NCBI RefSeq assembly: GCF_021028975.2
Contig: NC_059433.1
Span: 51,026,143 to 51,090,000, forward strand
Length of the DNA: 63,858 nucleotides
Reading direction: 5' to 3'
DNA from: Sphaerodactylus townsendi
Taxonomy: Eukaryota
Part shown: positions 4,442 through 61,339 of the stretch, in pieces
Numbering within the stretch: the first letter of the stretch is position 1
How the letters are laid out: each line of letters opens with the position of its first letter
Notes under the pieces: model-generated
Database searches by the model: none
Seen by the model: only the letters and a program-made list of their open reading frames with translations
What the model was told of the DNA's origin: nothing
Translations under genes and position numbers: made by a program

Positions 4442-5366
4442 CAGGGGCGTACCTAGGCAAACTGGCGCCCAGGGACAAAACCTGAGTTTGGCGCACCCCC
4501 CGCCTGGCGTATGGGTGCCCCCCCCCCCACCATGACCATGACAATGATTTTTTGTACCAGCTCACAAAACACCTCCCACTCCCAGCAAAACATACATGGC
4601 TCTCTCCCCACCAACTCTTTTCCTAATTTCCTAATCACAACAACCCTATGAGGTAGGTTGTTAGCCTGAGCAACAACTCCAAGCCATTTCTGAGGCACGC
4701 TGCACATTTTTGGGGCCCATAAAATTGAACCCCCAGAAGCAAAGGTCTCCAAACCTGGATGATATTACCAGGAGGCCCTCCTGGAGCCACCCTGAAAGTC
4801 TGGTGCCTCTATCTTCAAAAATGTGCAGCCTGCCTACACACTCAGAAATTCCCCATTGGCTACAATGGAGCAAAATCACTGCAAAACAAAGAATCTTGGG
4901 CACATTTCTTGGGGTGCCTGGAAGGGGTGTATTTTTAAAGCTAGTGACACCAAAATTTCAGGATATCATCTGTTAACTATTCTTATGATGCCACCCAAGT
5001 TTGGTGAAGTTATGTTCAGGGGGACCAAAGTTATGGTCCCTCAAATGGGTAGCCCCCATCTCCTGTTAGCTCCCATTGAAAACAATGGGAATGGGGGCAC
5101 CCCCTTTGGGGGTCCATAACTTTGCTGCCCCTGAACCAAACATCACCAAATTTGGATGGTATTATCAGGACAGTCTCTGGATGGTACCCTGAAATTTTGG
5201 TGTTGCTAGCCTTAAAAATGCGCCCCCTGCAGGCCGGAACGTGAAAAAACACTTTAAAACTTTAAAAACACACAAACAACCCTGAAATGTTGGCGCCCCC
5301 CCACGTGACTAAATGGGGGCGCCTGGGGACATAGGGTACCCCTGTCCCTAGGCAGGAACGCCACTG
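4442..5366. mobile_element. Non-autonomous hAT-type element (family A, 925 bp)
   Basis: TIRs CAGGGGCGTACCT / CAGTGGCGTTCCT; perfect 8-bp TSD ATGGTCTC (4434-4441, 5367-5374); internal long hairpin at about 4948-5202. Confidence 0.92.
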
Positions 5367-6654: not shown

Positions 6655-6822
6655 NNNNNNNNNNNNNNNNNNNNNNNNNNNNNNNNNNNNNNNNNNNNNN
6701 NNNNNNNNNNNNNNNNNNNNNNNNNNNNNNNNNNNNNNNNNNNNNNNNNNNNNNNNNNNNNNNNNNNNNNNNNNNNNNNNNNNNNNNNNNNNNNNNNNNN
6801 NNNNNNNNNNNNNNNNNNNNNN
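6655..6822. other. Assembly gap (168 N)
   Basis: Run of N. Confidence 1.
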
Positions 6823-11291: not shown

Positions 11292-12265
11292 CAGTGAGAT
11301 AGGTATAGATTTTTTATGGGATAGGTTTGAGGGGAGGGGTCCTGCCCCCACCTGCCCGTGGGGGTGTGGCCACGCCTCCCCAAGCCATGCCCCCAGCCTC
11401 AGTGCTTATAAAAGCAGCTCCCCGAGGTTGGAGACAGCAGACTCCCCTGCCTCACCTGCCCGCCCCCCACTGGCTGGTCTCCCAGCCGTCAGCTGGCAGT
11501 CCCTTCTGCCCTCCCCTCCAGGCAGCAGCATAGCTAGGGAAAATGGAGCCCGATGCAGAATCTGAGTTTTGTGCCCCCCCCCCCCCCAATGGGCAGCCAC
11601 TGTGATGCTGGAATCCACCCCCAAACGGTATCATTTTCAATAGTGTTTAAACTAGGGAGCCCAGATTCTCCTTTTAAATCCACCTTAAAGGGAGAACCTG
11701 GGGTTCCCAGTTTAAAGAACATTGAAAGTGATGCTGTTTTGGGGTGGATTCTCCCCCACCCTGAAACAGCATCACTTTCAATGTTTAAACTGGGGACCTC
11801 AGATTCTCCCTTTAAATCCATGTCGAAGGGGGTGGATTTAAAAGGAGAATCTGGGGGAAATTTGGAGGGTGCCTGCTGTCAGGGGTGCAATTGTTAAGCT
11901 AGCAGAACCAAAATTTTAGGGTATCTTAGGAGATTCTCCTGATGATACACCCAGGTTTCATGAAGTTTGTTTCAGGTTATGGACCCTCAAAAGTGTCGCC
12001 CCCATCTTCTATCAGCTCCCATTGGAAACAATGGGGGATGGGGGCACCCCCTTTGAACCAAACGTCACCAAATCTGGGTGGTACCATCAGAAGAGTCTCC
12101 CAAAAATCCCTGAAATTTTGGTGCTGCTAGCCTAAAAACTGTTCCCCCTACAGGCCACAAAATGAAAAAACACTAAAAAATACAAAAAAGCTCACAAACG
12201 GGGCGGAGCTTCAGACATGTAATGGGGGGAGTTGAACCCGGGAACCCCCCTTACCTACGTCCTTG
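11292..12265. mobile_element. Non-autonomous hAT-type element (family B, 974 bp, composite)
   Basis: Termini CAGTGAGATAGGTA / CAAGGACGTAGGTA; perfect 8-bp TSD TCTACAGA (11284-11291, 12266-12273); multiple internal inverted repeats. Confidence 0.9.
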
Positions 12266-15894: not shown

Positions 15895-18494
15895 CTAAAA
15901 TAATTCCAGTTGGTGATGGGGGGAAGTAAGCATTTTAGAAGTTGCAATCATTGTGTATATACAGGAACACTTTAGTTCCATGCTGTGATTCAGCTGTGCA
16001 TATGCAGTTCCTATCAGATGATAACTGTGTTGATCAGCCATTTCTCCCAAATACCTGATTGGCACTATTGCTGTTACTAACTATTTGACAGAGCCACAGT
16101 TATTGAATAGATCTTTACAAATGCAGTCACAGTTGCTAGATTAGGATGGGGTGTAGTATGAATTTGTTTTAAAGAAGGTATGAATCCCAATATACAGGTG
16201 AGCTGATTAGAAATAAATACATTACCTTGAGTAAAAGGTATTTAAGGACAGCATCATCACAATAAAGGAATATACTGTTTTATGAAGGAAACAGAGTTAT
16301 AGCTTTAGTATCTGAAAAAATTGAAATTTTTACTCTGTGAATTGTTTATTGATGCATTCTACTGTTATTATTTTGTAATCCAGCTTTATTGTACTGTTTG
16401 TTGCATATATGAGGCCTACCTTTATTGTTTTCTTATTCTGTAATCCACCTCAAGTTTCAACAAGGCAGACTGTAAATGAAATAAATAAATAACGTACCAG
16501 ATCAATGCAATTGCAACATAAAAAAGCAAAGTCTATTTTTTCTTACAAAATTTAAATGATACACAGTTTCAGTAGAAAAAAATAGCTTCTGGTGGCGACC
16601 TGTGATTGCTGGAAGATGACAAATATAACTATATTCCAGTCACTGCTGTCACAGTTCTGCACAGCCTTGTTTATTTTTTAAAAAAATTCTTATTCAAAAC
16701 TTATGTTTACAACATTGTTATTATAGTATACATGTAGGAAATAATTATTATTATTATTATGGCCATGGTAAAAGATATGTACATGTGAGACAAGCAGAAG
16801 CGTATTGGGGGGAAATGGTGCCCAGAGACAACACTTTTGGGGGGCAGGGGCTTGGGGGCATGACTTGGGGGCACCAAGCCCTGCCCCCTGGCTTCCTTGC
16901 AGGCCAGTTCCTGAAGATGCCAGGAGCCGATCTGCACAGAGACTGGGGGGTGGGGCTTCAGGGAGGTATGAGGTGGGGCTTCAGGGGGTATGAGGTGGGG
17001 TTCAGGGAGAGGGTTCGGGGCCACCCGCCACCAAGTTATGCCCCTGGCCTCCATGCAGGGCCTGGGGATGCTAGGAGCCAGCCTGCAGGGAGGCCAGGAG
17101 GTGTGGTAGGGTGGGGTGGGTGGCCCAGGCAGCTGAGCCCCGCCCCCTGCCTCCCTTCAGGCCAGCTCCTGGGTGACTCCATGTCCCTATAGGCTGTATG
17201 CCTCTGGAGACAAGTATACAAACAGTCAGAGTTTAACTTTCATTTTTCTCTGCCACCTTTCCAAGCACTAAACACCTTGCCTGAAAGGGGAGGGGTGACC
17301 TATTAAGTCCAATAAATAATAATAAAAGTGGGCGCAGCTGCAGAACATGGTAGTAAATTTCCAGCAGTATACTGCTGTCTCTCACGTTCTTGGCTAGTAT
17401 GTTTGATCCTGAAGACAGACAGATAGGACTCAAAATGGTTCTGAGGATAATTTTATTGGACTGTTTTGGGAAGAGTAAAATCAAACTGCAAAAAACCTTA
17501 TTGCTATGATCACTTCAAGGAACTTTGCATGGCTTTTCTCTTAAGTTAGACATTAGGGGAAAGCAGTTTTGCAATCAACAAGACATACTTCTAAATAAAT
17601 ATGTTTAGGAATGAAGTGAAGATAACCAAGTTATATTGCTTCAACCACACAATGCATTGTGTGTGTGGTGTATTACATTAATACAACAGAAAATAGGTGA
17701 GAAGGAAATACTGAATATTATTACAGGTCTCAGTTTCATCAGGTAAACTATACGTAAATGCTTCTACATTCTATTTCACACTTCATTAAATAAAATTAAA
17801 CAGTTAGCAGTACAACATTGTAAATAGCTTGGCACTTCGAACTACTGTAGCAAGAATAACTTGTCAATATAGCTTTTAAAGACATTACACATAAAACTAA
17901 CATTTCAAATAGGAAAGTGAGAATTTGGCACAAACAAAATTCTTCATTTACTGCAAGACATAATGTTACATAATTGCTTGTAAAAAAAATGAAGTTACAG
18001 TGTGAAAAGTAAGAGATCACTTGTCCAAATAATACAAAAGACAAGTGGCACCTTCCATAATACATTCCACTATTCATCAAGTTTTTAAGGGATAGAAGAA
18101 TTATACTTCTAATCAATTAATTTAATCCGTGATTTTAAAAAAAAGAACAGGAAAACTTAACCTTTGTGAGCAGGTCAGTTTACTGGTCACAACGCCAAGC
18201 AATAATAAGCTCAGTAGCCAGGTCTCCAGATTGGCCCCAATGTATTTTGCAAATGTTTGCCCTTGTAAAAACTATCCTACATATTACACAGCCACTAGGT
18301 CAGAGAACAGATTTTACCTTTCAACTTGAAGTACAATATATAGAGGAAAATGTTCAGATGTTTCCAGAAAAATATGAATATGCATAGTGAGATAACATGT
18401 GTGCATACCATTCTCAAGGCCTAAACAGAATGAATCCCTGCATATAGAATAAATCTGTCAGTGTCAAACAAAACTATATTAAACTGAGCTCCAC

Positions 18495-26779: not shown

Positions 26780-27540
26780 GCAACTCGTTATAAAGAGACT
26801 GTACCGAATCCGCTCAAAGTTGCTTCAAAGAAATGGGCTGGGCGTGATCCCATCCACTGCGTAAAACGAGAGAAGAGGCGGATCTTGAAGACGCTCGCTC
26901 AGGCTCTGGAGTTCACCCGCTTCTTCTGCACAGGCAGAGCGGCATCAGCGCCCTCCGCTTTCCCGCCACCAGGCGCTCTTCTCTTTTGGCCCTTGCACCA
27001 CGAGGTCTCTCTCCCGCCTCCGCGCCTACACTCACCATCTCCAATCCGGTTCCACGGCTGGGTGAAGCGCCCGTTGCAGTTCGTGTTTTGCGTCTCCAGG
27101 CAACGACGGCTGTTTCGAAGACGCGCGTGGGGCGCTCCCCCGCTCTCCTCCCCTGCTCCGGCTTGCCGCCCCCACCCCTTTTCCTTCAAGCTAGGCGGCA
27201 CGTTTAGCTCTTTCAAAGTAGCTTGAATACTGTAAAAGACTCTACTGCAAACTACTGCAAATATTTTTCTCGGCACTCGAATAACGGCGTTTTCCAGCGT
27301 TGCTGTTTCAAAGTATACAGCCATAATGTTACAAACCAACTGGAAGAAATTGCAATAAATAAAACGCCGCTCACTGCGATCACACAGGGAACGGGAATAA
27401 TTCAGGCACGTCCCGTGGTGTCCCTTTATGCTACAGACCCTGAGGTTGTCACTTAGCTCTCGACACCTCACTTTATGTTCCCGAAAGGGGGAAAATATTT
27501 CCGTATTGCTTCTCTGTGTTTGAAACATACCGCAGGCTCT
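26780..27540. promoter_or_regulatory. CpG island, candidate main CCDC178 promoter
   Basis: CpG-dense unique sequence with RFX-like GTCTCCAGGCAAC (27092-27104), CCAAT (about 27041) and GC-box CCGCCCC (about 27166), upstream of the CCDC178 exons. Confidence 0.55.
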
Positions 27541-29368: not shown

Positions 29369-30536
29369 CAGGGGCGTAACGAGGCAAACTGTAGCCCTGG
29401 GCAAAACCTGAGTTGGATGCCACACCCTCCCCCCCCCCCATGGGCGGCCACTCCACCATGACCAAATTTTTTTGCAACAGGACATTGGTGCCTGCAAGGG
29501 GTACATTTGTAGACATATCAACACCAAAATTTCAGTGTATCATCAAGAGACTGTCCTTATGCTGCTCCCCCAGGTTTGGTGAGGTTTGGTTCAAGGAGTC
29601 CAAAGTTATGGATTCCCAAAGGGGGTGCCCCATCCCCCATTGTTGCCAATGGGAGCTAATAGGAGATGGGGGCTACAGTTTTAAGGGTCCATAACTTTGG
29701 CCCCCCTGAACCAAACTGCACCAAACCTGGGGAGTATCATCAGGGCAGTCTCCTGATGAGACCCTGAAAGTTTTGAGACTGTGCCTTCAGAAATGTGCCC
29801 CCCCCCAGCCTGCAACCCCCATTGACAGCAATGTAGAAAACTCAATGCAGAACAAAGATTCTTGGGCAAATTTCTGGGATGTTCCTGCAGGGGGCGCATT
29901 TTTGGATGTATTGGCACCAAAATTTCAGGGTATCATCTGGAAACTGTCCTAATGGGACCCCCCAGGTTTGGTGCAGTTTGGTTTAGGGTCAAAGGGGGTC
30001 CCCATCCCCCATTCTTTGCTAAGGAGATGGGGGCTACCCTTTTGAGGGTCCATAACTTTGGACCCCCTGAACCTAACTGCACCAAACTTGGGGGTGCCAT
30101 CATGACAGTCTCCAGATGATACCCTGAAATTTTGGTGCTGATACGTCCAAAAATGCACCCCCTGCAGGAACATCCCAGAAATTTGCCCAAGAATCTTTGT
30201 TCTGCATTGAGTTTTCTGCATTCATTACCCATTACCCAGCGTATCATCAGGAGACTGTCCTTATGCTGCCTCCCAATTTTGGTGAGGTTTGGTTCAGGGA
30301 GTCCAAAGTTATGGACTCCCTGAACCAAACCTCACCAAACTTGGGGGGTAGCATAAGGACAGTCTCCTGATGATACGCTGAAATTTTGGTGCCGCTAGCC
30401 TAAAAACTGCGCCCCCTGCAGGCCAAAAATGGAAAACCACTAAAAATACCCAAAAGCGAACCCTGCATTTTGATGCCCCCCACAAGGTGGTGCCCTGGGC
30501 AGATGCCCACCTTGCCCAATGGGCATTATGCCCCTG
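29369..30536. mobile_element. Non-autonomous hAT-type element (family A variant, 1168 bp)
   Basis: TIRs CAGGGGCGTAA / CAGGGGCATAA; perfect 8-bp TSD CTTCAGGG (29361-29368, 30537-30544); three internal hairpins built from the same module. Confidence 0.92.
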
Positions 30537-36504: not shown

Positions 36505-38277
36505 TTACATATTACATGGTTTTGTTCACAGGTATAGGAAGGACTAAATACCATCTTATTTGAATATTATATTTCTATTTTGGCACAGTTTTGTCTACAT
36601 GGAAGTCATTGCACACTTCTAATTTTAAATATTTGTAACCATAGCAAAATGTGCATATGCATTTCCCCTGTGTTGTCCATAAAGAAGGACCTTATTGTTC
36701 ACATAAAATTGCACACTTTTTGTACAAAATGTATCGAGGTTCAAAGATAGGAAGCTCTTTGATGACAATTCCCACACTGGGGGCGGGGGGTGTCAGTCAC
36801 AATAGTGTTGACTAGTAGCTGTGGTAAACATAGGTTTATAAATATTCTAATCAAAGAATACTTCCTTTGTTCTGGGGGAAAAACACATCTGTTCAGAAGG
36901 ATAACTAGATCAGTATGACGTACTATTACTGAATGTCCCTTGCACCCTTGCAATACTTTTCACTTGCGTTCTGTCTGTCATGATGGCTCCTCTGATGCCT
37001 CTGGTTTTGCTTGTTCAGATTTGTCATAGCCCTTCTGGCTTCAAATGATTTATCTGATCTCCTTCCATTAAAAAAACCCTTTGCTAGTCTTGACCTAGGG
37101 CATGTTGGTTCTTTAGAGTGATTTTGAGATCTGAGAATCTGAATACTCAAGTCTGTGAGCATCCAATGTGAAATTGAACCCCCTCATCTATGTCAGTGCT
37201 CCTTGAGTTTTTGAATTACAGCTTGTTGATGCTGATTGACTCAATGGTTTTGGAGCTTTTAGATCAAAACTGTTAGACAACATTCTGTACTTATATTTGA
37301 GATAGATTCAAGTCATGCATCAGTATTCGGGTATATCATCCTGAAAATCCATAATGATTGTGAGCAATAAGCCAAAAAAAGTTATAAATATGACTAGAAA
37401 ATCATATAAGGATATTACTGGTAATGCTATAGAATAAATGATCACATATTTCCTAATGTTTTCTATTTAACCACTATCAATTATTTTTCTTTATCACAGA
37501 TTAGTAACCCTTATTCCAAACTTATATGTGCAAAATTTCACGTTTATTAAGAGCTTGAATGGGTAAAGGACAAGAATATGTAGTTGCCTATTCCAAAGGT
37601 TCACAATTAGATATGGGAGTGAATAAAAAGAAATGAATGCATTTCTTAACAATTAACAGAGCATCTCCCAACATGTAGTGGGCATACTGGTTTTTCAAAT
37701 GAAAAAGTGCTTCATATGAAAAAAAAACTCCATAATACTTGAAAACACTGTAAAGATAAGATTCTAAAAATTAATATCAATATACAATCTATGAGTGTGC
37801 TTCCATATTAATTCATTCATTCATTTTTAGATTTATACCCCGCCCATCCCCGTAGGGCTCAGGGTGGCAAACAGCATAATATAACAGTATACATTAAATA
37901 AAATACAAACTTGTAAAATAACATACATAAAACTGTAAAATAAAAAAGTTTAAGATGGCGACTTAACACATCAAACCTAGCACTAGTCAGTTACAATAAA
38001 TATGATGAAGATTCTGTTTTCTATACATATGTCTCTATCGGCCCCTTGAAACCACAATTTTTGTTGCATTATTTCCACACCGTGCCACTGCAGACTTTTT
38101 GAGGAATTAAAAAAAAGGTCAATTGCTATCTTATCTTACTATCATAAATAATTGGCTAGGGGTTCGAATATCCAACAACGAACCCTTAGGCAACTGCTGT
38201 GTGAGACACACAGGGTCCAAAGCCTCTTGTGTCCTGCATGCCCATTGGCCATTGGCATCAAAACCTTCAACACTCCC

Positions 38278-38280
<3 letters not shown>

Positions 38281-38344
<64 letters not shown>
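38281..38344. repeat. (AC)n microsatellite
   Basis: Direct observation. Confidence 1.
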
Positions 38345-38346
<2 letters not shown>

Positions 38347-38441
38347 ACTTCCCTTCCCCAGCCTTGCAAGCCTGGGGGAGGAAGGTGAGGGTGAATGCCC
38401 TGCCTGTTGGACTCATGCGCCCTCACCCCCTACCCTATCTA

Positions 38442-38956
38442 GGGCCCTTTCCGCACGTGCCAAATACAGCGCCCTGGAAACGGCAAAAACACCGTTCCCA
38501 GGGAGCTGTTCGCATGGGGGGCGCAGCTGCTTCGCAACCACGCCGCCCTCGCGCCTCCCCAGCGGCGCAATTACCATTTTGCCACTTCGTTTCCCGAGCG
38601 AGGTTGCTGGAAAACGGCGGCTTCCAGCCGCTGCCATGCAAACGGCAGCGGCTGGAAGACACCATCCCTCCCCCCTTTGCCCGATTGACCTACCTTCTCT
38701 GTGACCGTCCGGCATGTCGCCGAGGCCTGGGGACACGCCCCCCTGCCCTGCAACTCCGGAGCAGTGCCGCAGGGCAGGGGTGTGTGTCCCCTGGCCTCGG
38801 CGACGCGCCGGATGGTCGCAGGGAAGATACGTCAATCGGGCGATGGCACTCCGCGGTGCCATCTTCCCTTTCATTACCTGGACCGTTCGTGCGAACGGTT
38901 CCGGGGGGGTTGGGTCGGCGTACATGACCCCCAGCGTGGCCATGCGGAAACAGCCC
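38442..38956. mobile_element. CpG-rich PIF/Harbinger-like MITE with internal hairpin
   Basis: TIRs GGGCCCTTTCCGCA / GGGCTGTTTCCGCA; internal inverted repeat with arms of about 70 bp at 38679-38841; TSD unclear. Confidence 0.75.
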
Positions 38957-39529
38957 AAGTCTGTTGTATTACCCTACAGCAGGCTTTACTGCTAGTTCCA
39001 TGACAACACAACAGCAATTTATATGGAAAAAAATCTCTCAAAAAGCTCTATAATGGTACAACAAGGGGAAAGGGGCTGATTGCAAGGCTGCCTCTGGTGA
39101 TGGTCAGGCTAAATACCTGCAGCTGAGGAGGAACAAACGCTCAATCTAGATCATGTTCAGCTGATACAAATTTCCTCTCACCTCCATTTGCCTTCCATTT
39201 TAACAGAATTCTGCGCTGTTCTAAATCAAATTCTTCACTTTTCATTTGGAACAAAGGTAAATGAGAAGATAAAATAAAGTAGGAATTAATTCAGCGGAAG
39301 ATACGATAGTTTGATAGGCAGCCTTGTTTTTCCAGATGGTAGCTGAATTGTCCTGACCCTCTTCCTACACAACAAAACTTTCTGCTACATAGTACATTGT
39401 TAGAGATAGGGCATGTGTGGGTTAAGTTGAGAAGGGGGGGAGAAAATTAGAGTGATGATTGTTTTGAACTCAGTCTGGATGGAAAGGCAGTCTCTAGCAT
39501 TTGGTATCTTTTTAAAAAAAATAGAAACA

Positions 39530-45100: not shown

Positions 45101-46724
45101 GATTTGCATCATTCTGTGTTCATCCATCATTCACAAGAGTTTGGTCAATTAATCTGGTTTTGATTTCCATATAACATTTTTAAGGATTTGAGTTTTAAAG
45201 AATTCCATTATGTCCTTGTGCTCTTTTGGCTTTGCTAGCAGTGTAGTCTTAGCTATAATAAGTTATAATGTACTTTCTGCAGACAAAATAAATTTAGAAG
45301 AGAGATTTTTATAGTATTATTGTCTCTGTAAAGTACTCAATTTTGCATGCTTTCTGTCTGTTCTACTTGTTCCTAATTAATTCAAAAAGCAGACATGAAC
45401 CATGAAGATTATTCTTTACTGATTATATTTAGTAATTATGACTGATATATTTTTCTTAGCATAAATGATGATAGCATAATCACTTAATATAATGAAATAT
45501 TTTTAATAATTTTGCAAAACCAAATGAGTGGGCAAAACCAGGGGGCCATAAAATGATAGTAGCTTTTAAATACACATTAAAATTCTTTCATTTCCCAAAC
45601 CAGTCTTTCTTATAGGTTTGTATTCTAATCGGCAATTGTAACCTAATGGCCAGTTGTCTAAATGACTGTCCTATAAAGCTTACAGCCCACAAACCTTTAT
45701 TACTTGTTATATAATGTCCTGCATTCTGCCTTATAGCCTCTTTACATGACCTTATGATAACCTCAGGACTTAAGGAAAGGAATTGCTTCATCCAATCCCA
45801 GAATTTTAGATTAACCCTTTACTTTTAAAAATGTGATTGTTGGGTGATGTAAATTTTTAGAACCAACACTTTACATTTAACTGCACTGTTTCTGAAAGTG
45901 AAAGGCTAACATTACATGGATGCATTGTTATATTTCTTTATGTAAAGCTAGTAATATAAACACTGTTTTGTGATTTTGCATATACTTATACAATGATTTA
46001 CAGTCCTCCCTGCCACATCACTATTTTCTACTTCAGTTTTCTAGATCTTGGGTAGAAATCTCCCAACAGAACCCTGCTGCCGAGCAGAGGCATTTCTTGG
46101 CAAACTGGAGCCCGGGGACAAAACCTGAGTTTGCCCCCCCCCCCCGGTATGGCCGGCCATCCTCCCCCACCACAACCAAACAATTTTTTTTGCACCAGCT
46201 CACAAAACATCTCCTACCCCCAGCAAAACATACATGGTTCTCTCCCCACCAGTTCTCTTTACTAATTTTGTCCTCACACCAACCCTATGAGGTAGGCTGT
46301 TAGCCTGAGAAACAGCTCCAAGCCAGTGCAAGCGGGTATTAAGAATGTAAATCTCTCATAAATCACCCCCAACGCAGCTCTACTACAGCTGACAAGGTTG
46401 AGTGGTGTCGCCAATCTGCCTCCCTTCCTTGCCAGGCTGTATACAGAGTTATACTGGATCATGGGCTTAGATTGGAGAACTCTGTATAGGACAGCACTGT
46501 TAATTCCTGGTGAAGTTGTTCAGATAGTGTAGTATAGGGACAATCTTGGAGATTTAATTAAATACGATGTTTGCATAATATCCTGATCATATGAAGACTG
46601 TCAAGCATATCCTATGGAATGGTTGAATATGTTTAATTGTAGGAAGAGACTTTACTCACAAATGTTTCGTGCTTGACATGAGACAGGCTTAATTATCAAT
46701 TAACATTTATTATGTCAAAGCTAG

Positions 46725-46980
46725 GCCTTACAACAGAACTTCAACAAGAAAGAAAAGATTCTGAGAATTAACAAAGCTTGGCTACCAGTATTTTAAAACA
46801 CCAGAATCAAAGGCCAAGGTCATGCAAACCCCACCCACAATCCAATACTATCAACCACATCTTTGCATAGCAAGTTCCACCCAAACACTTACTGATTTGT
46901 TCCCCTCCCTGGGACATGGACAATATATACCCCACTAAAACATTTCCTTCTCACTGGACACAGTGTGTAACAGACTTCTA
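46725..46980 (+). mobile_element. Penelope-like ORF C-terminal and UTR remnant inside the cargo
   Basis: Translates NRTSTRKK/NFNKKEKILRINKAWLPVF-like sequence, recalled as the end of the Penelope GIY-YIG domain. Confidence 0.45.
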
Positions 46981-48173
46981 TTTCAGGTTCCTCTTCATAC
47001 CTTCTGTTAAACAGCCAGCCTTACACATTTTTGCTGGTTTAATTTTTCCATTTGTAAAATTAACATCATTCTCTTCCACACTAGTCTTAGTAAACAGGTT
47101 AGAAATGTTAAACAAAATTAGTTGGCTCTAATTACAGGGTCTTCATATTGTCACACACATCAGCTTCATCCACTCTAGATGCAACAGTGTACCTGACTCA
47201 ACCGCAGGGACACCTCTGCCATTTTACTGATGAAGTGCCTACAAATGCTGCAAGCGACTGATCCTGATCAGGACTGCTGCAGTGAAGGGAGCGGCTCACC
47301 CTTGACATTTTCAGTAGACCAAATCACTGGCCCTTGAGCTTTTGAAAATGTTGCGGGGGGGGGGGCAAGCTCCTGTCCTCCCCTTCTTTGTGGGTTTAAT
47401 CAAGTTTTAAATATGGGTGGGCTGTGTCCAGATTTTTTTAGTTCCTTTACAGAAACAGAAACACTTAAACAAACAAGTACATTAATAAGAATAGAAGGGT
47501 ACAGAAGGTCCAAGCCTCTGCCTGATACTGGACCCTGATATATCAACTGTAGCTGATTAACTCATACATTCTGAACAATAACATGAAAAGGTAAAACTAC
47601 TTGCATCAAACAAAGATGCAAACTCTGTTCTAGTATTCTTGTTTAATTGGTATAGGAGAATATCTCTCTTTGGAGAATCCTGGCTCATCCCTCAGCTTTT
47701 ATATAGTTCTACAAACAGGAACCTGTTCACTTTAAGTGGCAAGGTGAGGACACTAAGATGCAAATTATGTTGGCTGGAACTGGAGGCCAGATCAGCTGAA
47801 AAGAAACAGGACAGACCAGGCCAAGAGAAGAAAAGTAAAGATTTGAGAAAACAGTATGTGAATGGAAAAAGGACTGACAAAGAGAAGGTTTATGACCAAA
47901 CTTCACTGGGATCCAACAAGCTAGGGGGTGCTACGTCTTTTAAGTAAAATCTTTGTGCCTTTAATTTATTACACTGCTTTCCCAAAAATTGCAACCTGAA
48001 ATCTACTTAGTTGAAATTCCAAGAATTGAAACTGGAGCTTGTAAGCCTCTCCTCAGCTTGGCTTACCCGCCGCCTCACCCACTGCAAGCGCCACTGGCCT
48101 TTGGAATGGGTTTTCCAGAAGCAAGCGTCACTGGCAGCGGATGAGGCAGTGGGCTGCAACTTGATGGCACTCA

Positions 48174-48175
<2 letters not shown>

Positions 48176-48237
<62 letters not shown>
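48176..48237. repeat. (AC)n microsatellite
   Basis: Direct observation. Confidence 1.
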
Positions 48238-48241
<4 letters not shown>

Positions 48242-48936
48242 CGATTGCATTGCTTACTGGATATCCCATCCTGTTGATGGCACTGTTTGGCCTTGGGTAA
48301 TCCACCTCCAGCCTTAGTGAGAAAGGGGGAATATAAACTTTGCCAATAAATACATGAATGAATAAAACAGCAAGCCAAATTATACAAGGTGAGAAGCTGA
48401 CAACACTTCCCTGTCACTGCTTGAATTGTGGTGGCAAATGTGTGTGTGTGTGTGTGGGGTGGAGGCTTTCACCATAGGGCCTTTATGAAAACCCTGGGGT
48501 GGGTTAACAGCCAGGGGGAGATTGGCTTTCTAACATACCAAGACCTCTGATGGGCCACTGCCCCGGGAACCTTCCAGTGGTCAAGAGCTGAGCTGACTGG
48601 ACCACAGGGGGCTAAAGATGCCATTGCCAGACCCCAGGTGGGACCTGGAGATCCCCTGGAATGACAGCTCCTCTCCAGACCACGGAGATCACTTCTCCAG
48701 GAGAAAACAGATGCTTTGGAGGCTGGGCTGTGGGGCATTCACCAGTGGTCTGGTGGGAGGGCAACACTACTGGGGGGGGGCGGGCGCTGTGTCCAGGGCT
48801 GCTTGAAACACCAGCCCTGTTCCCAGCTTTCTGCAAAGGCTTAGCAGCTGAAGAGCTGTGGGTTCCCTTCCTGAAAGCTCGCTGCCCACCCCGTCTGCTC
48901 ATTTCAGCTGGCAAGAAGAAAGAGGAGGGGGGGAGT

Positions 48937-48968
<32 letters not shown>

Positions 48969-49610
48969 GCAGCCAAACAGGCTCTGAAGGAGCAACCCAG
49001 GTCGCCCTCCTCCTCCTCCTCCTCCTCCTCCTCCTCCTCCTCCTCCTCCTCCTCCGCAAGGACAAAAAGCTGTCGTCCCCTGCGCGTAATCCAGCCTTGC
49101 ACCTGCCCAGCACCTGCCTTGCTAGAGTCGAACTGGCCTAGCGAGGAGAGGGGGAGGAAAGATGGACCAGCCCAGCCATCGAGCTGACAAACCTCTCCTG
49201 GTTCGCTGTGGCTGCCCCTTGGAGTCGTCAAAGGGACGCCCGTGCGCTCTCTGGGCGCAGTGCCTGTGGGCTTGGTGAGCGACCGGCAGGTTGGGCGCCT
49301 GCTGCACTCCAGGGAAGAAGCGGCACCTGGTTTTGAAAGGAGGCAGCGGCAACACCAGGGAAGGGCCGAGGGGGAGGGGGCATGGTGGCTGGCCGAGTGC
49401 CCTCCACCCCTCATTGCCAGGCCGGTCTTCACTTACCTGGTCAGCAGCCAAGCGCACCAGCAGCTGGCCTCCAAACATGCCGAGGTGGGGCGCAGTGCAG
49501 AGAGAAAGCGGGGCAGGCGAGGAAGGAGGGGCAGGGCGGCTGCAAGGTGTGTGGGGGAGACGGGCTGAAGTCTGCAGGAAGCAAAAGCCTGCTTCTTCCC
49601 ACCGTGCCTG

Positions 49611-49651
<41 letters not shown>
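48937..49651. repeat. Cluster of (GA)n, (CCT)n and (CTG)n microsatellites in GC-rich cargo
   Basis: GA at about 48937-48967, CCT at about 49006-49055, CTG at about 49611-49651. Confidence 0.95.
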
Positions 49652-49652
<1 letters not shown>

Positions 49653-50046
49653 GCTCCAGGGGCTGGCTCGACTTCCCTTCCCTGTGCCGGCCAGTCAGCC
49701 GAGGAGAAGGCAAGGCATGCTGGGTCGGAGGGAGGCGGAGCTCCCCGGCTTACTGGGAGCTGGGACTTGGAGCACACTACACAATGAGACTGGGCCAGTG
49801 GGCCACCATCCAGAGTGGGCGGGGCTGAGTTAGCCTGAGCCCAGTGGTGGTGTAAAGCTTGCTGGCAAAATGCTGCAGTTTGTGGGGGGACATTTTGGCG
49901 CCCCCCACGTGACAGAAATTGTTGCGCCCGGGGACAAGGGGTACCCCATGTCCCTAGGCAAATTCGCCACTGCTGCCCAGCTTACCTGGGGTCCTTGGGC
50001 AGGTGAGAGGCCAAGGAGGCGATAAGGCTGCTGGCAGGAGCCAACA

Positions 50047-53155: not shown

Positions 53156-54292
53156 GAGAGATGGTCTCCTGTGATTAAAATCAATGCTGTGCAACTGCAC
53201 AACTGTAATCATAAACCTTAGAGTGGAGTGAAATACCTTACATTTTAATTAATACTTCTGGAGTTTGCATTGTTATCCCCAACAAATCAGACCATCACAA
53301 CAGTTCTCTGCTTGTCAGCCGTTCTGTTCCTTTCTAGAGTCATGGTGTTGGTGTCAGCCACCTCATTCTGCTCTGTTGACAAATATAAATCTTGCCCTTC
53401 CTTTTCTTCCTTAGAGCCTGCATTTAAGTCTCCTTTCTTCCTGTCCTCCAGGTTCCTGTTATGTGCCACATCCTGCTTGAGCTCCTTGGGCACTTTTGCC
53501 CACTATGGTGTCCTGTAACCAACAGCACCCATCTCAGTCTCCCTGCAAAAAACTTCATCCTAATGCATTTTCATATATGAAGATTTTAATATCTAAATCT
53601 CTGTATAGCATGTCATTTGCCCATCTTGACAAATACTCTGACTGTTTCTGGCTGTCCAGTATCTCGGGCACAGCTGAATGGTTCTCTGCTTCCTGCCTTC
53701 TCTTTCACACCCCTGCCTTCTACCTCTCAATACGCACTCTTACCCAATGATTACTATGGCAGTTACAGAAGGATTCAGAGAAGAAAATTTACTGATACAG
53801 TATTAATTGTTGAATGAAACTGGTATAATATTATCTCTAATGTACACACTCTTTGCAAACAAAATACATGGATAGTTTGGTGGTGGTTGATGACATACAA
53901 GCTGCATACCACTGCCTGCAGTTGCAACAGAATAACATGCAGTCTTCTGATATGAAGTTGCCTTGCAATGACTTTTCTGAGCAGGTTGAATATCTGCTGG
54001 TATCTTTATCAGCTAACAACACAAGATACTATAGTAGAGGTTGTTCAGGTATGTGTACTTTGGGAACCATGGAAAGACGCTGATGGTATAATTTCTGGTA
54101 GGAATCTTGATCCTGTTTTTGTTCCAGTCCCAAGACACTGGTTGCATTCCTAGAAATAATCAGTACAGGGAGCGGGGGGAATCATTCCATTCTCAGAACA
54201 GGTTATCTAGTTTCAGGGACTGTCATTCTACTCTTAGGCCTCTCATTTCAATTGCAAAACGCTCCTGCTACTCCAAGAGGCTGTCATTCCAT

Positions 54293-57200
54293 CAGGGGTG
54301 TAGCTAGGAAAAATGGAGCCCGGGGCAAAATCTGAGTTTTGCCCCCGCCCATGTAGACGACCACCCTCCCCAACCACAACCAAACAACAATTTTTTGCAC
54401 CAGGTCATTTCAGTCACCATCACATTGTAGAACATGCCCCAACTCACAAATCTGAACACAGCAATGGTTCATGCCACACAGTGGAAATATTGTTTTGACA
54501 TTTTCAAAATGTTTTATTACTGCTGAGAAAAAATATATAAAAATAAAACAAAAGGGCCCAAAAAGGAACTTCTAAATGGCTTTCATTTGTTTTCCTGCAT
54601 GACACTAACCCTAACCCTGTGATCCATGGGCAGGGAGGTGTGTTGGGGATGGAGGGGGGGGGGAGGCTGGCAGAGCTTGCAATTTGTGGGATGTGTTTGT
54701 ATTGCAAGCTGTTCTGGAGGACTCAGATGGTCAAAAAGATGGCAGTACAATATTTTAACAGTACAAATCAATGTATAAATATTATATGTACTTAATCAGA
54801 AGCAGATAAACACACTCCGACACTATCACTCAGGATCAGACAAAATCTTGATTTCAATACTAATGTCTTAACACAGTCCACTATTTTCTTGATGACATTT
54901 CTGAACACTGGTTAACCTCAAAGGCCAAAATATGGGGTATAAATACTTCCACAAAAAACAACCCTGGGCAAATACAGCACCTTCACCACAAGGTAAGGGG
55001 TGCTGTCTTTCCGAGTGTGTCCATGACCCTTCATATCCCTCTTAAGATCAGCATATGTTAAAGTTAATTGTAGACTTTCCTTCTTTTTATCACTTTTCTA
55101 GAGCAGCAGGTCCACAATGATGCTTACTGAACTGATGCAAAATCACCTTCTAAAGGTGTTTTGGAAGTGAGGCTAAGGGCACTATCACACATGAGAATAA
55201 TGCATTTTCAAGCCACTTTCAATGCACTTTTCAGCTGGATTTTACTGTGCGAAAGAGCAAAATCCACTTGCAAACAATTGTGAAAGTGGATAGAAAATGC
55301 ATTATTCTGGAAATGCCAAAGTGCCCCAAGAACAGTTCATACACTTCACGAAACCAACAGGATAGGCATTTAGCTAGCCAAAACACAACACATACGCACA
55401 CAATGGATTGACCAAATTGCCAATTTATCAGCACATCACAAAAAGAGAAAGACTGAAAAACCAACTTTAAAAAATACAGATAAAAACTCTCCTGGAGGCA
55501 CAGCACTATGAAAAACCACATGGACCCACACAGGAAGCAGCCTTATACCAAGCCAGACCTTTTGGTCTGTTGGGGTCAGCATTGCCCACTCTCACTGGAC
55601 ACAGCTCTGCTGGGTCTCAGTTGGAAAGTCTTCCACATAACCTCCTACTTGATTTTTTAAACTGGAGATGCCAGCAATTGAACTGGGGACTTTCTGAATG
55701 CCAACTAGATGCTCTTCCACTGAGTCATGCCCCCAAACTTCTCTCCTTCCCTCCCTTCCATAAAGGCAGAGGACTCCACAGAATCCTGACTTCTGCACAC
55801 TTCTGATTGGGGGCAGGGGTGTGTGTGGCTTTTCTGAATGTGCAAAACACCTTCCTGAGGGGAAAGTGGAAATATTTTATATTACAACCAATTGGAACAG
55901 TGTGTTTCTTTTTTACTTACATTTTTTTACCTTTCCTTTTTAAGGGAAACACGTCTATTTATTTGAACCCTTATTTATGTTGCTTACAAAGTGTAGCCCT
56001 GTGTGGAATGGGGGGAGAATGAAAGGAGAAAAGCTGACCCCCTCTTAACAGCCCAGCTCAATCTTAAACACACTTACTTGAGAGTAACTGCTACTGAATT
56101 CAATGGGATTTACTTCAGAGTATACGCTTCCAGGTTTGCACTTCAAGAGGTTCTTTTTAGTTGACTAGAAGAGGGATTTTTGGGAGGCAACTGTTTAATT
56201 GCAGTGGTTGAGTTTACCTTTGATGGGGATGGGTGAGTTCTGAGATAAAAACTGAAATCCCAATTCCAGAAAATGTGAAGTCCTGCTGCCCCAAACAGTC
56301 CAGAGTCCCTTTACTCACAAGCCGGTCCTGCTGAGCTCAGTCGAGCAAGCCCCCCCCCCTCTTGTCTGAGCAGCCCATGCACTCCGAGCAAGTCAGGGAG
56401 GTGAGAGGAAGAAGAGGATCGTTCAAAAAAAGTTTAAACAAAAAAAAAGGCCAAAACAAAAGCAGAGGGCAGCTCTGGGAAAGGACAGGAAAGGGGAGTT
56501 TCTTTCTCCCCTGCCCCCAAGATCTACCGTGAAAGGCGAAGGAGCAGGGAAGGGGAGAAGTCCAAAGCCCTTTGCTCTGTGCAACGTCCACAACAGCCAA
56601 GACACAAAACAAGGCACCAACTTCTGCAAGTAGCAGCAGGGAAACTGCGCGGAGGGAGGCTCGTGGGTCCCGGCAAATGGAGGGAAGCCTGGACGCCCCC
56701 CCCCTGCATTCTCACACACATGCGCTCACGCTCACACACCCTCCTCCGGCTGAATCTCGCCCCCAACCAGATCCAAATGCATCTCTGGCGCAAAACTGAA
56801 AGGGCTCCTTCCCCACTGTGGTCAGCCTCCCCTCCACTTGCTACCAGCACAACCTGGGAGACCCTCGCTTGGAAATGCAGCCCTTCTCCCCATTGTTCCG
56901 TCTGGACGCCCCCTCACCGTGTGCTGCGCGCCTCTCAGCCCTTGATGGGGGCGGCAGTGGCAGGGCTGGCAAACAAGTCAGTGCTGTGGCCGCTGGAGGG
57001 TCTGAGCCATTAAAAGTGCTGGGAGGCGGCGGCGGCGGCGGCGGCCACAGGCGGAGAAGGGAAGCGGTGGGAGCGGAGGGGGAGCGGCGGGGAAGGGTCG
57101 CCATGGCTAGGGCGAGCTCGCTGGCTCCCATAGGGAAAGTGGAGCCCAGGCGAGAAATGCAGGGCGGGGACGAAGAGGAAAGCCTCGCTGGTGAGAGAAG

Positions 57201-57467
57201 CAGGAAGTGGTCACTGCTGCTGCTCGTTGGCTGTCTCCCTCTTCCGCCCACCCCCAGCCGGCTGCCTGGAGGGGAGGCGGGGAGAGCACTCCCTCGGCTG
57301 GAAGCCAAAAGGCGCAGGCCTCCTCTCCGGCATCGTGCAGCCAAACCAAGCCACGCCCCTCCTCCTTCCCGGAAGTGTGCAGGGAATTTTTCCGCCCTCC
57401 ACGTGACCTTGCAAGCCTGCGCCCGGGACAAGCCGCCCCGGATGTCCCCGTTGGCGCTTTGCCACTG
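54293..57467. mobile_element. Large cargo-carrying hAT-type element (family A termini, 3.2 kb)
   Basis: Termini CAGGGGTGTAGC / CAGTGGCAAAGC; perfect 8-bp TSD CATTCCAT (54285-54292, 57468-57475). The left about 110 bp and right about 75 bp (CCACGTGAC...GCGCCCGGGACA...TGTCCC...GCCACTG) are homologous to family A ends. Confidence 0.88.
55177..55326. mobile_element. Palindromic 150-bp Harbinger-like MITE inside the cargo
   Basis: GGGCACT...AGTGCCC ends, TAA / CAA flanks, mostly self-complementary. Confidence 0.65.
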
Positions 57468-57864
57468 CATTCCATTCTGGGGCCTCTCGTTCCAGGCCCA
57501 GAATATTGATTCTATTTGTGGGACCGTCATTCCACTCTGGGAACTGTCATTCCAATCACAGAAACCTTTTCTTACTCACATGTACCACCACTCCATTCTG
57601 AGGCTTGTTATTCCAGGTCCACAACACTTAAGCTGTTCCCAGGAATCATCATTACACCCTGGCAGCTGTCATCCCAGTCCCAGAAAAGTCTATCTGGGCC
57701 AATTGACCATCGTTCAAAATCCATTCTGCATTTTCACTGCAGCTTTTGGGTGTTGTAATATTTCAGTGGAGCCGACTGAAGCCAGTTGGCATTGTTTGTT
57801 CCCATTATATCCACTGGGCATTCCCACCTCTCCCATTGTCTCCAACATGTCAATTATTTTAGGA

Positions 57865-58060
57865 ATAAGATTGCCAGTCTCCAGGTAGAGCCCGGAGATC
57901 TCCTGCTATTACCATTGATCTCCAGTTGATCAAGATCAGCTTCCCTGAAGAAAATTGGCTGCTTTGGAAGGCGGATGATGTAACATTATATCTGCTGAGT
58001 CCCTCCCCTCCACAGACCCCTGCCAGTGCCTTCCCAAGACTTCATTCCCAAACTCTCCAG
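57865..58060 (+). repeat. Unclassified interspersed repeat
   Basis: ttgccag...ccaggt...ggagatc...ctccag...agatca...gaaaa...gctttgga, shared with about 48622-48740. Confidence 0.6.
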
Positions 58061-59699: not shown

Positions 59700-60232
59700 G
59701 AGGCAATATGCTATCATTAAAAAAAAGGCACAGGCGCGTTGCACATTGGGGCATGTAGTCTAGTCTTAATTGTTCCCCTTTATGTGTAAAACTAAAAGGG
59801 GAGTGGGGAAGGGAAAGAAATAGAGGGGACGGGAGTGGGTTGAAGAGAGGGTCTCCAGAAGCTCTCGCGAGATCTTTGAGAGCTCTTTCTTTTCTCTGTG
59901 TCTCGTGCGGTTTGCTCGCGAGCACGGCTGCCTTGGCTGGGATGTTTTGTACAGTCGCCATTCCCTTGTGTGACGTCATAGTGCATTGTTGTGACTTGCG
60001 TAACGGAGCATCCCTCAAGCTGTCAGCTGTGTCGCCGCCGCCGCTGCGGGAGCGCGAGCCCCAGCCGGCCCAGCCCTCCGCCTCCTTGTCTTCCTCCCGC
60101 CCCTCCCTCAGGGGTTCTAGAACTCCACGTCACCGTATCATTGTCTGTGCGGGACCCTCCGGCTCCCCCTCCCTCCCCCGTCCCTGCACGTTCCATCCCG
60201 CCCCCATAGAACCATCTCAATGAGATGCAAAC
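59700..60232 (+). promoter_or_regulatory. ASXL3: ASXL3 CpG-island promoter and 5' UTR
   Basis: CpG-rich; TCTCGCGAGA (59863-59872), GCTCGCGAGC (59914-59923), CRE TGACGTCA (59971-59978), TTGCGTAA (59996-60003). Confidence 0.8.
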
Positions 60233-60286
60233 ATGAAAGACAAGAGGAAGAAGAAGGACCACACCTGGGCCGAGGCTGCCCGCCTG
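60233..60286 (+). CDS. ASXL3: ASXL3 first coding exon (start of HARE-HTH/ASXN domain)
   Basis: MKDKRKKKDHTWAEAARL then CTG|GTAGGT donor; matches the recalled ASXL3 N-terminus MKDKRKKKDRTWAEAARL. Head-to-head with CCDC178 as in mammals. Confidence 0.95.
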
Positions 60287-61339
60287 GTAGGTGCGACCAG
60301 AGCTTTGTGCGCGGGGGGCCGGCCCGCCCGGTTGCTGTTCCCGGGGCAAGTCGGGGAGGAGCCTAGCGCAGCCTGCTCCGGACTCGAGTCCTTTGCATTG
60401 TTGCGGTCGGTAGGGGATGCTGGAGTGACTGTGCAAGGCTGGACGTGGGGCAGAGTCAGTTCTTCTCGAGCTTCACGGCAAAGCTAGAGATGCGGGATGG
60501 GACTGGAAGCGGCGGCGGCTGCGTTCTCATGGAACGGTGTTCCGTGCAGAAGTCTTGGCATCGGGGGTTCTGTGAGAACTACTTTGTTCAGGGACTGTCT
60601 GCATGCCACGTCCTGCAGTGAGGTAGTGAAAAGACCAAGAGGTTACTCCGGGGGCCGGTGGGAGTGAACCTACTGAACACAATGCGGGGATCCCTGGGTG
60701 GTGTTGTGTATAAGTCACAGTGAAGCTCCCTTCCCTTCCCTCACCTGACCTAACCACGACCACTTGGGATTCTCCTGCAATAAGCTGAAAGCTGGAGGGC
60801 ATTATCCCCCCCCCCCCGCCCACGAGCAGTTTCTTATGTGTGGAGTTGTGTGGACTTATCCTGGGACCACAGATAAGCCACTCCCTGCTCACCCTGATTG
60901 TGACCTCTCCATAATGATTTCATACATCATCAGAATCAGGGCATATGTAAAGCAGACTGAAGTAGGGGTATTGGTTTCATCCTGAAGACAGTGTGATCAT
61001 TTCATTTCTATGTGCATGCACACAGGAGAATGGGCACCTCCCTTTGTAATGAAATATGTAGAACCGAGCAATTTCCTGGATAATAGTACAGAAAATGTTA
61101 TTGGGTGTGTATATACGTGTGTGTTTGCATATGCATGTTTGTGTGTGTGTGAATGAATTACTCAGATAAACTTCTGTAGCATGTACATGTCCAATAAGTA
61201 TTTACATCTTTTAACAAGCATGTGAGGCATTGCACTCAAGACTCCTTTGTAGCATATATGAGTGTAATATTTGTAACCTCTGCACCCCTCTTCTCCCCCC
61301 AACAAAAATAAAGGGATGGGGTAAAAGCCAGGAGCCAGA

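What the first reader, a model, noticed from the sequence alone, without database searches (positions are those of the whole stretch)
54293..57467. 3.2-kb element with perfect TSD carrying a housekeeping-type promoter and first exon
Seen inside the TIRs: ETS/GABP motifs CCGGAAGTG (about 57369) and CAGGAAGTG (about 57201), an SP/KLF box GCCACGCCCC (about 57350) and a (GGC)n run. On the minus strand there is a good Kozak GCCATGG at 57104 opening MATLPRRSPSAPTASLLRLWPPPPPPPP..., ending at a donor CACG|GTGAGG near 56917, followed by about 2.5 kb of intron-like DNA with a SINE and a MITE. The CTGTCATTCC repeat on either side resumes across the TSD, so the whole block behaves as one insertion. CpGs are retained, which suggests a young or unmethylated copy. 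It lies about 2.8 kb upstream of the ASXL3 start codon and could act as an ectopic promoter or enhancer. The donor gene is not recognised.
Basis: partly seen in the sequence, partly recalled or inferred. Interest (0 to 1): 0.8.

Follow-up and report, generated by a model that had tools for sequence, protein, structure and literature searches.

The report
Cargo-carrying hAT transposon upstream of ASXL gene
This is a real, fairly recent insertion of a 3.2-kb "hitch-hiker" DNA transposon of the hAT type whose cargo looks like a gene promoter. The same cargo sits in about ten other places in a related gecko, no donor gene or transcript was found, and lizard hAT elements are already known to pick up genomic DNA.

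Summary
Window 54293-57467 (3,175 bp) is flanked by an exact 8-bp duplication, CATTCCAT. Removing it restores the 61-bp period of the surrounding repeat. A contig from a related gecko (flanks about 3% diverged) joins 54284 to 57468 precisely, which is the empty site.

The ends (CAGGG.../...CACTG) belong to a hAT family with four more duplication-flanked copies in this window. One is a 3.9-kb sibling (46085-49972) that shares only about 115 bp and 92 bp of ends with this element.

The cargo contains no transposase remnant. Its right-hand 0.6-1.1 kb is a CpG-island-like block carrying ETS, SP/KLF and E-box motifs.

- The cargo is not a one-off capture. The related species, which lacks this insertion, holds the cargo, CpG block included, at roughly 10 times single-copy depth.
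- The "first exon" is ambiguous, because equally good exon-like units exist on both strands.
- It has no protein relative in 1.8 billion sequences.
- Two RNA libraries show no transcription or splicing.

No donor gene was found and no promoter activity was shown.

The scan noted this same stretch as s1-747524, and similar cargo-carrying hAT units elsewhere in this genome (s1-743345, s1-740321, s1-740239).

The parts
54285..54292 (.). left copy of the 8-bp target-site duplication, CATTCCAT
   Evidence: In one search the 8 letters fit both sides of the empty-site joint.
54293..57467 (+). element A: a 3,175-bp non-autonomous hAT transposon, oriented left end to right end as in its family
54293..54411 (+). 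family left end. It starts CAGGG and holds the subterminal motif GAGCCCGGGGCAAAA at 54317-54331. The stretch up to about 54569 is very high copy in related genomes.
   Evidence: BLAST to element B: 78% over 119 columns, E 9e-20. nhmmer 1.9e-33. Depth about 15,000 times single copy.
54513..54518 (-). AATAAA on the minus strand near the left end, a possible polyadenylation signal if the element is read on the minus strand
   Evidence: Sequence only, no RNA support.
54570..57375 (.). cargo: no similarity to the cargo of sibling B and no transposase remnant
55194..55308 (.). nested hairpin MITE (53-nt arms, 77% complementary), extremely abundant in related genomes and in RNA reads from other copies
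   Evidence: I1; bins 55106-55373 and loose ends; one search gives only sub-threshold generic hairpin hits
55540..55740 (-). nested tRNA-derived SINE, with the tRNA-like head at 55663-55734
   Evidence: RF00005, 20.8 bits, below gathering; bin 55642-55775 is raised. Extent judged by eye.
56300..57467 (.). GC-rich CpG block. The core 56880-57467 has GC 0.675 and CpG o/e 0.65.
   Evidence: No relatives found.
57103..57190 (+). mirror exon-like unit on the plus strand: same palindromic GCCATGGC, 29 codons, GT donor at 57191
57025..57045 (.). (GGC)7 run
57350..57377 (+). SP/KLF-type box GCCACGCCCC (57350-57359) and ETS consensus CCGGAAGTG (57369-57377). A second ETS-like CAGGAAGTG lies at 57201-57209.
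57376..57467 (+). family right end. It ends GCCACTG and holds the E-box CACGTGAC (57400-57407) and the motif GCGCCCGGGACAAG (57419-57432), both conserved in siblings B and C.
   Evidence: BLAST to B: 71% over 96 columns, E 2e-6; nhmmer 9e-20
57468..57475 (.). right copy of the target-site duplication, CATTCCAT
46085..49972 (+). sibling element B (3,888 bp). Same family ends, unrelated cargo, duplication CTGCCGAG/CTGCCCAG (7/8). GC-rich block next to the same end. Minus-strand ATG at 49478 giving MFGGQLLVRLAADQ, then a GTAAGT donor.
4442..5366 (+). sibling C, a 925-bp MITE of the same family with duplication ATGGTCTC (8/8)
29369..30536 (+). sibling D, a 1.17-kb MITE with duplication CTTCAGGG (8/8)
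16795..17206 (+). probable distant sibling E (412 bp) with duplication GAGACAAG (8/8). The end matches are weak.
   Evidence: (E 0.07 and 0.03)
60233..60286 (+). ASXL-type first coding exon, MKDKRKKKDHTWAEAARL, followed by a GTAGGT donor, inside its own CpG island (59880-60700, o/e 0.73)
   Evidence: The family name comes from my knowledge of ASXL N-termini; the paralogue was not tested.

Best explanation
Window 54293-57467 is one copy of a young, multicopy, non-autonomous hAT transposon family of this gecko lineage.

It was cut and pasted by a hAT transposase supplied in trans. It landed in a 61-bp minisatellite 2.77 kb upstream of an ASXL-type gene and duplicated 8 bp of target. The insertion happened after, or segregated across, the split from a related species that still has the empty site.

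Only about 120-270 bp at the left and about 90 bp at the right are family ends. The 2.8 kb between them is cargo that travels with the element: an AT-rich part with an old SINE and a hairpin MITE, and a 0.6-1.1-kb CpG-island-like block abutting the right end.

Shown: the insertion, the hAT family membership, the lack of transposase, and that the cargo is multicopy.

Inferred: the cargo was taken up once by the family's founder as a piece of ordinary genomic DNA, plausibly the 5' end of a gene. This is the behaviour described for lizard hAT (hobo_AC) families. Nothing shows that this copy acts as a promoter or contains a real exon.
For: - Exact 8-bp duplication, and restored 61-bp repeat register.
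- Run X6 (organism E) has a 2,430-nt contig at depth 36 that joins 54284 to 57468 ('skips 3183', 8 letters fit both sides). Its flanks differ from the window at 26 of 818 bases.
- The termini CAGGG/CAGTG fit the hAT YARNG motif, and the 8-bp duplication is the hAT hallmark (PMC3014272, section 8).
- The left and right ends match sibling B (E 9e-20 and 2e-6) and siblings C and D. Each sibling has its own 8-bp duplication.
- No Pfam family in 30 ORFs or stop-free pieces.
- Cargo contigs in X6 stand at depth 391-506 against 36 for the single-copy flank. Six to 12 distinct contigs cover sites in the CpG core, and bins 56446-57249 sum to 354-724, although X6 lacks this insertion. Those contigs differ from this copy by about 1.5%.
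- The nested SINE and MITE lie in one high-depth contig (55303-55729), so they were in the family before it amplified.
- Anolis hobo_AC families show the same pattern: similar ends, unique centres made of genomic DNA that contains older TEs (PMC3014272).
Against: - The terminal inverted repeats are poor (9 of 16 bases).
- No autonomous partner with matching ends was seen in this window.
- Contig depth is an indirect copy-number measure. It can be inflated where a contig includes SINE or MITE words, so 'about 10 copies' is rough.
- The junctions of this very copy were not seen in the same-species run X2, so independent confirmation of the assembly at this site is lacking.
- The strongly promoter-like make-up of the cargo, and the same placement and orientation in sibling B, suggest the cargo may be more than random filler.
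Confidence: 0.82

Rival explanations
1. Pack-type capture, with function. The cargo is the promoter, first exon and part of intron 1 of a host housekeeping gene, transduplicated by hAT ends. At this site it acts as an ectopic promoter or enhancer near ASXL3.
For: - CpG-island-like block with a consensus ETS site (the only CCGGAAGT in 63.9 kb), an SP/KLF box, a Kozak ATG, an open frame and a GT donor, followed by AT-rich DNA with old repeats.
- Sibling B has unrelated cargo with the same layout next to the same end, including ATG...CAG|GTAAGT.
- TE-borne 'promoter + first exon + partial intron 1' is documented for HelibatN3/NUBPL in bats (PMC4224331).
- Capture of DNA between neighbouring same-orientation insertions is the Pack-TYPE model (PMC8903248).
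Against: - No parental gene found. There were 0 relatives of the exon peptide among 1.84 billion proteins, 0 in the word search and no Pfam match.
- An equally good exon-like unit exists on the opposite strand.
- Two RNA-seq libraries give at most 2.5 reads of depth over the block and no joint at 56917. They come from a species lacking this copy but holding about 10 relatives.
- No internal relics of fused ends.
Confidence: 0.25
2. Internal-deletion derivative. The CpG block, exon-like piece, intron-like DNA and the minus-strand AATAAA near the left end are what remains of an autonomous element's own multi-exon transposase gene (its promoter, 5' exon, intron and 3' end) after the coding exons were lost.
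For: - In A and B the GC-rich block sits at the same end in the same orientation.
- The E-box CACGTGAC is conserved in the right ends of A, B and C, so that end may be the native promoter side.
- AATAAA on the minus strand at 54518.
- An unchecked scan note reports an autonomous hAT here with a 5' exon spliced to its transposase (s1-743286).
Against: - No transposase remnant at all.
- The cargoes of A and B are unrelated although their ends are 71-78% alike.
- The cargo contains older nested repeats, as expected of ordinary genomic DNA.
Confidence: 0.15
3. Not an insertion. The 8-bp match is a by-product of the CATTCC-rich tandem repeat, or of misassembly, and the CpG block is an ancestral upstream promoter of the ASXL gene.
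For: The duplicated octamer is part of the repeat unit, so short matches are more likely there than in random DNA.
Against: - A precise empty site in a related species.
- Family ends shared with four other duplication-flanked elements.
- The cargo is present elsewhere at high depth in the species with the empty site.
Confidence: 0.02

Closest known systems
Non-autonomous hobo_AC (hAT) families of Anolis carolinensis (Novick et al., PMC3014272)
   Same: - Lizard hAT elements of 1.3-3.4 kb with 8-bp duplications and YARNG termini.
- Families share ends but have unique centres made of incorporated genomic DNA that already contained older TEs.
- Young, low-divergence, modest copy number.
   Different: - Different terminal sequence: the Anolis elements start TAGGCTTG, these start CAGGGG/CAGTGG.
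- A gecko host.
- The cargo here includes a CpG-island-like, promoter-motif-rich block at a fixed end, which that paper does not describe.
Pack-TYPE transposons, including Pack-hAT, of plants (PMC8903248)
   Same: - Non-autonomous TIR elements whose conserved ends flank unrelated, less repeated internal DNA.
- Neighbouring same-orientation insertions are proposed as the route of capture. A and B lie 4.3 kb apart in the same orientation.
   Different: The definition requires cargo matching a host gene. That was not shown here. These are also plant systems, and the animal record is sparse (PMC2572040 states that transduplication of coding genes was unknown in animals in 2008).
HelibatN3 and other promoter-carrying Helitrons of vespertilionid bats (PMC4224331)
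   Same: [quoted passage not shown] 5' gene ends are over-represented among its captures.
   Different: Those are rolling-circle Helitrons (no duplication, no TIRs) with an identified parental gene (NUBPL) and thousands of copies. Here it is cut-and-paste hAT, there are about ten copies, and the parent is unknown.

Membership tests
hAT superfamily, non-autonomous element | 8-bp target-site duplication | tested here: met
   CATTCCAT on both sides, 8/8. The 8 letters are shared at the empty-site joint. Siblings score 8/8, 8/8, 8/8 and 7/8.
hAT superfamily, non-autonomous element | YARNG terminal motif and short terminal inverted repeats | tested here: met
   The ends read CAGGG and CAGTG. The inverted repeat itself is weak (9 of 16). 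Criterion as given in PMC3014272.
hAT superfamily, non-autonomous element | Ends shared with other independently inserted copies | tested here: met
   BLAST to B, E 9e-20 and 2e-6. nhmmer finds 4-6 copies in the window.
hAT superfamily, non-autonomous element | Mobility: presence/absence at an orthologous site | tested here: met
   Precise empty site in run X6.
hAT superfamily, non-autonomous element | No transposase of its own | tested here: met
   No Pfam hit in 30 ORFs or stop-free pieces.
hAT superfamily, non-autonomous element | An autonomous partner with matching ends encoding a hAT transposase | not testable with these tools
   None in the window. Scan notes mention intact hAT transposases elsewhere in this genome (s1-740228), but their ends could not be read here.
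Pack-TYPE / transduplicating transposon | Cargo homologous to a host gene that exists at a separate parental locus | tested here: inconclusive
   No protein relatives and no Pfam match. No squamate genome was available for a DNA search. High-depth cargo contigs in X6 cannot tell family copies from a parental locus.
Pack-TYPE / transduplicating transposon | Same ends, different internal DNA among relatives | tested here: met
   A and B share only 115 bp and 92 bp of ends.
CpG-island promoter | More than 500 bp with GC above 55% and CpG o/e of at least 0.6-0.65 | tested here: met
   56880-57467 (588 bp): GC 0.675, o/e 0.65. The whole block 56300-57467 has o/e 0.54.
CpG-island promoter | Transcription starts there | tested here: inconclusive
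   At most 2.5 reads of depth and no splice joint in two RNA-seq runs of a related species that lacks this copy. No RNA from the window's own species was on hand.

The most novel reading that the evidence does not exclude
This gecko's hAT lineage repeatedly takes up CpG-island promoters with a first exon and intron from host genes, always at the same end and in the same orientation. Examples would be A, B and the similar units noted elsewhere in this genome. Such cargo could keep elements unmethylated or drive transposase in autonomous relatives, and it would scatter ready-made promoters next to genes such as ASXL3. That would be a cut-and-paste counterpart of the bat Helitron promoter captures.
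Probability: 0.2. Interest if true: 0.7.

Novelty: new member of a known kind. Interest (0 to 1): 0.38.

Why it matters
The result documents a hAT family that was still moving around the time related gecko species split, with a clean filled-site/empty-site pair. That is useful as a phylogenetic or population marker and as evidence of recent DNA-transposon activity in geckos.

If the CpG-rich cargo proves to be a captured host promoter, it would be a rare animal example of promoter transduplication by a cut-and-paste element. It would also be a ready-made natural experiment on whether a mobile CpG island stays unmethylated and alters a neighbouring developmental gene (ASXL). As it stands, the promoter and exon reading is unproven, and the behaviour (same ends, unrelated genomic cargo) is already described in Anolis.

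Tried and rejected
- Word-based protein search with the 229-aa minus-strand ORF that spans the exon-like unit: 4,036 candidates, none at E <= 0.001.
- Full phmmer search of the 62-aa exon peptide against 1.84 billion representatives: 0 hits.
- Pfam on 10 ORFs of the CpG block and 20 stop-free pieces of the AT-rich cargo: nothing, apart from one chance-level ubiquitin-like hit at E 0.1. I therefore dropped the idea of a decayed transposase.
- Rfam and ARAGORN on 54000-58000: only sub-threshold hairpin and tRNA-like hits.
- Exact-pattern scans of the cargo (SP/ETS 28-mer) and of the family end motif in metagenome and viral collections: blank. These collections hold no gecko DNA, so the blanks mean little.
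- nhmmer for internal relics of family ends inside A, as the 'fusion of two neighbouring elements' model predicts: none.
- RNA: two raw-read libraries show no expression or splicing of the block. This is weak evidence, because that species lacks this copy.
- ASXL exon 2 was looked for in the window to name the paralogue and was not found.
Only single exons were used, by reference.
- The N run at 6655-6822 was left alone.
- I considered and rejected Helitron (the ends and the duplication do not fit), an LTR or retrocopy origin (no LTRs, no poly-A tail, 8-bp duplication with hAT ends), and a chance duplication (refuted by the empty site).
Full report
**What is there.**
- The element runs from 54293 (CAGGGGTG...) to 57467 (...GCCACTG).
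- CATTCCAT lies at 54285-54292 and again at 57468-57475.
- The flanks are a degenerate ~61-bp tandem repeat. TRF misses it, but the repeat finder family D1 shows copies 60-61 bp apart at 63-71% identity.
- The spacing across the insert is 3244 = 3183 (element plus one duplication) + 61, so removing the element restores the register.
- The listed motifs, the (GGC)7 run, the minus-strand ATG at 57104 with a 62-codon open frame and the GT donor at 56917 are all present.
- CpG o/e is 0.65 over 56880-57467 (GC 0.675). It is 0.12 in the rest of the element and 0.11-0.17 in the flanks.

**It is a true insertion.** I laid two DNA-type runs and two RNA runs on 53900-57900.
- In run X6 (organism E) a 2,430-nt contig at depth 36 runs 53900-54284 and continues directly at 57468-57900: "skips 3183", with 8 letters fitting both sides. 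This is the precise empty site with a single CATTCCAT.
- Its flanks differ from the window at 26 of 818 positions (about 3%), so it comes from a related but distinct species.
- Run X2 (organism B) matches the flanks at 1 difference in 401 positions, so it is probably the window's own species. No junction of this copy was listed for it.

**It is a hAT element of a family present several times in the window.**
- The termini CAGGG and CAGTG fit the YARNG motif. With the 8-bp duplication, these are the hAT hallmarks as stated for lizard hATs in PMC3014272.
- The strict inverted repeat is poor (9 of 16 bases).
- About 115 bp at the left and about 92 bp at the right match a second element at 46085-49972 (78% and 71% identity, E 9e-20 and 2e-6). 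That element has its own duplication, CTGCCGAG/CTGCCCAG.
- Profiles of the two ends also find short copies at 4442-5366 (ATGGTCTC, 8/8) and 29369-30536 (CTTCAGGG, 8/8), a probable one at 16795-17206 (GAGACAAG, 8/8), and a left-end fragment at 11527-11599.
- Both ends carry a GCCCGGGGACAA-like motif in direct orientation. The right ends of A, B and C share CACGTGAC.
- The left 270 bp stands at about 15,000 times single-copy depth in X6, and the right end at about 300 times.

**Cargo.**
- Between the ends, A and B share nothing.
- Thirty ORFs or stop-free pieces of A give no Pfam family, so no transposase relic remains.
- The AT-rich two-thirds contains a hairpin MITE at 55194-55308 and a tRNA-derived SINE in minus orientation (sub-threshold).
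- The right third is the CpG block.

**The cargo is multicopy.** Organism E lacks this insertion, yet it holds the cargo.
- Single contigs cover 54908-55089, 55303-55729 and 55953-56152 at depth 506, 391 and 435, against 36 for the flank.
- Bins across the CpG block (56446-57249) sum to 354-724.
- Six to 12 different contigs cover individual sites in the CpG core.
- Those contigs differ from A by about 1.5%.
- Depth is an indirect measure, and some of these contigs include SINE or MITE words. The CpG-core contigs do not, so a family of roughly ten copies is the reasonable reading.
- X2 shows the same pattern at lower coverage.
- The 31-mer index finds 27-45% of the block's words in runs labelled as five different organisms.
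- The nested repeats lie inside one high-depth contig, so they were in the family before it spread. This is the same argument used in Anolis to infer uptake of genomic DNA (PMC3014272).

**Promoter and exon claims.**
- The motif content is somewhat more than chance. CCGGAAGT occurs once in the whole window, here, against 0.04 expected in the block. GT[AG]AG cores occur 7 times against 3.2 expected.
- The "exon" is not diagnostic. The palindrome GCCATGGC gives a Kozak ATG, an open frame and a GT donor on both strands: minus 57104 to 56918, plus 57103 to 57190.
- The minus-strand peptide is proline-rich and low in complexity. It has no relative in the word search or in a full phmmer pass over 1.84 billion proteins.
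- In two RNA-seq libraries (about 16 million reads sampled from each) the block has at most 2.5 reads of depth and no joint. Almost all RNA reads laid belong to the abundant MITE and the hAT left end of other copies, and 91-95% of them run on into unlike sequence.
- These libraries come from the species that lacks this copy, so they only weakly argue against activity.

**Most likely mechanism.**
- A hAT transposase made elsewhere in the genome recognises the conserved ends, excises a family member and integrates it with an 8-bp staggered cut. This step follows from established hAT biology, and here the product and the empty site are seen.
- The family's founder acquired 2.8 kb of foreign DNA. 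Whether that DNA was the 5' end of a host gene (Pack-type capture, as in PMC8903248, or the bat HelibatN3 case in PMC4224331) or the remains of an autonomous element's own 5' region cannot be decided here.
- The same placement and orientation of a GC-rich, exon-like block in A and B hints at more than random filler. Other unchecked notes on this genome point the same way (s1-743345, s1-743286, s1-740321). A follow-up of a similar element found no captured gene (s1-740239).

**Comparison and novelty.**
- Same ends with unrelated genomic cargo containing older TEs, young age and modest copy number are exactly what Novick et al. described for Anolis hobo_AC families (PMC3014272).
- I therefore file this as a new member of a known kind.
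- The CpG-island cargo at a fixed end is the one feature that could lift it to a new variant, if a parental gene or promoter activity is shown.

**Limits.**
- No squamate genome could be searched at the DNA level.
- The name ASXL3 rests on the 18-residue first exon and my recollection of ASXL N-termini. The paralogue was not tested.
- The N run at 6655-6822 was not touched.

Noticed in passing
window 46085-49972: Sibling hAT element B (3,888 bp, duplication 7/8) has unrelated cargo. It has a GC-rich block (48760-49972, GC 0.63, CpG o/e 0.38) next to the same end as in A, long (CTG)n, (CCT)n and (CA)n runs, and a minus-strand ATG at 49478 giving MFGGQLLVRLAADQ followed by a consensus CAG|GTAAGT donor. 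It lies 4.3 kb from A in the same orientation.
   Followed up: partly
window 4442-5366, 16795-17206, 29369-30536, 11527-11599: Three more short members of the same hAT family have perfect 8-bp duplications, and there is one left-end fragment. C and D share an internal repeated unit that is absent from A and B.
   Followed up: partly
whole window: All six left-end hits and all five right-end hits of the family lie on the + strand. For six independent insertions the two-sided chance is about 0.03. This could be an orientation bias from local hopping or selection, or it could be chance.
   Followed up: no
window 54100-54292 and 57476-57760: The target is a degenerate ~61-bp minisatellite built around CTGTCATTCCA. 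It is itself moderately repeated in run X2 (bin 57518-57651 at depth 3177, against about 7 for single-copy sequence).
   Followed up: no
window 55194-55308: A hairpin MITE (53-nt arms) stands at tens of thousands of times single-copy depth in the DNA runs. It is well represented in RNA reads of both libraries, at depth 300-440 on both strands. Its consensus extends beyond the copy here with ...GGCCCCTTCCGCACATGC on each side.
   Followed up: no
window 54317-54331, 57400-57407, 57419-57432 and the matching places in B and C: The family ends carry a GCCCGGGGACAA-like motif in direct (not inverted) orientation at both ends, and a conserved E-box CACGTGAC about 65 bp inside the right end. These are candidate transposase-binding or native promoter elements.
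   Followed up: no
window 56980 and 57161: Two of the roughly seven bases in the CpG core where this copy differs from the multicopy consensus are CpG-to-CpA changes in this copy. That hints at some methylation-driven decay. The numbers are too small to conclude anything.
   Followed up: no
window 59880-60700: The ASXL-type exon 1 sits in a separate, stronger CpG island (o/e 0.73) with its own divergent GC-rich ORFs. A further GC-rich patch lies at 26438-27528 and another, beside a (CA)n run, at 38123-38958. Neither has family ends.
   Followed up: no
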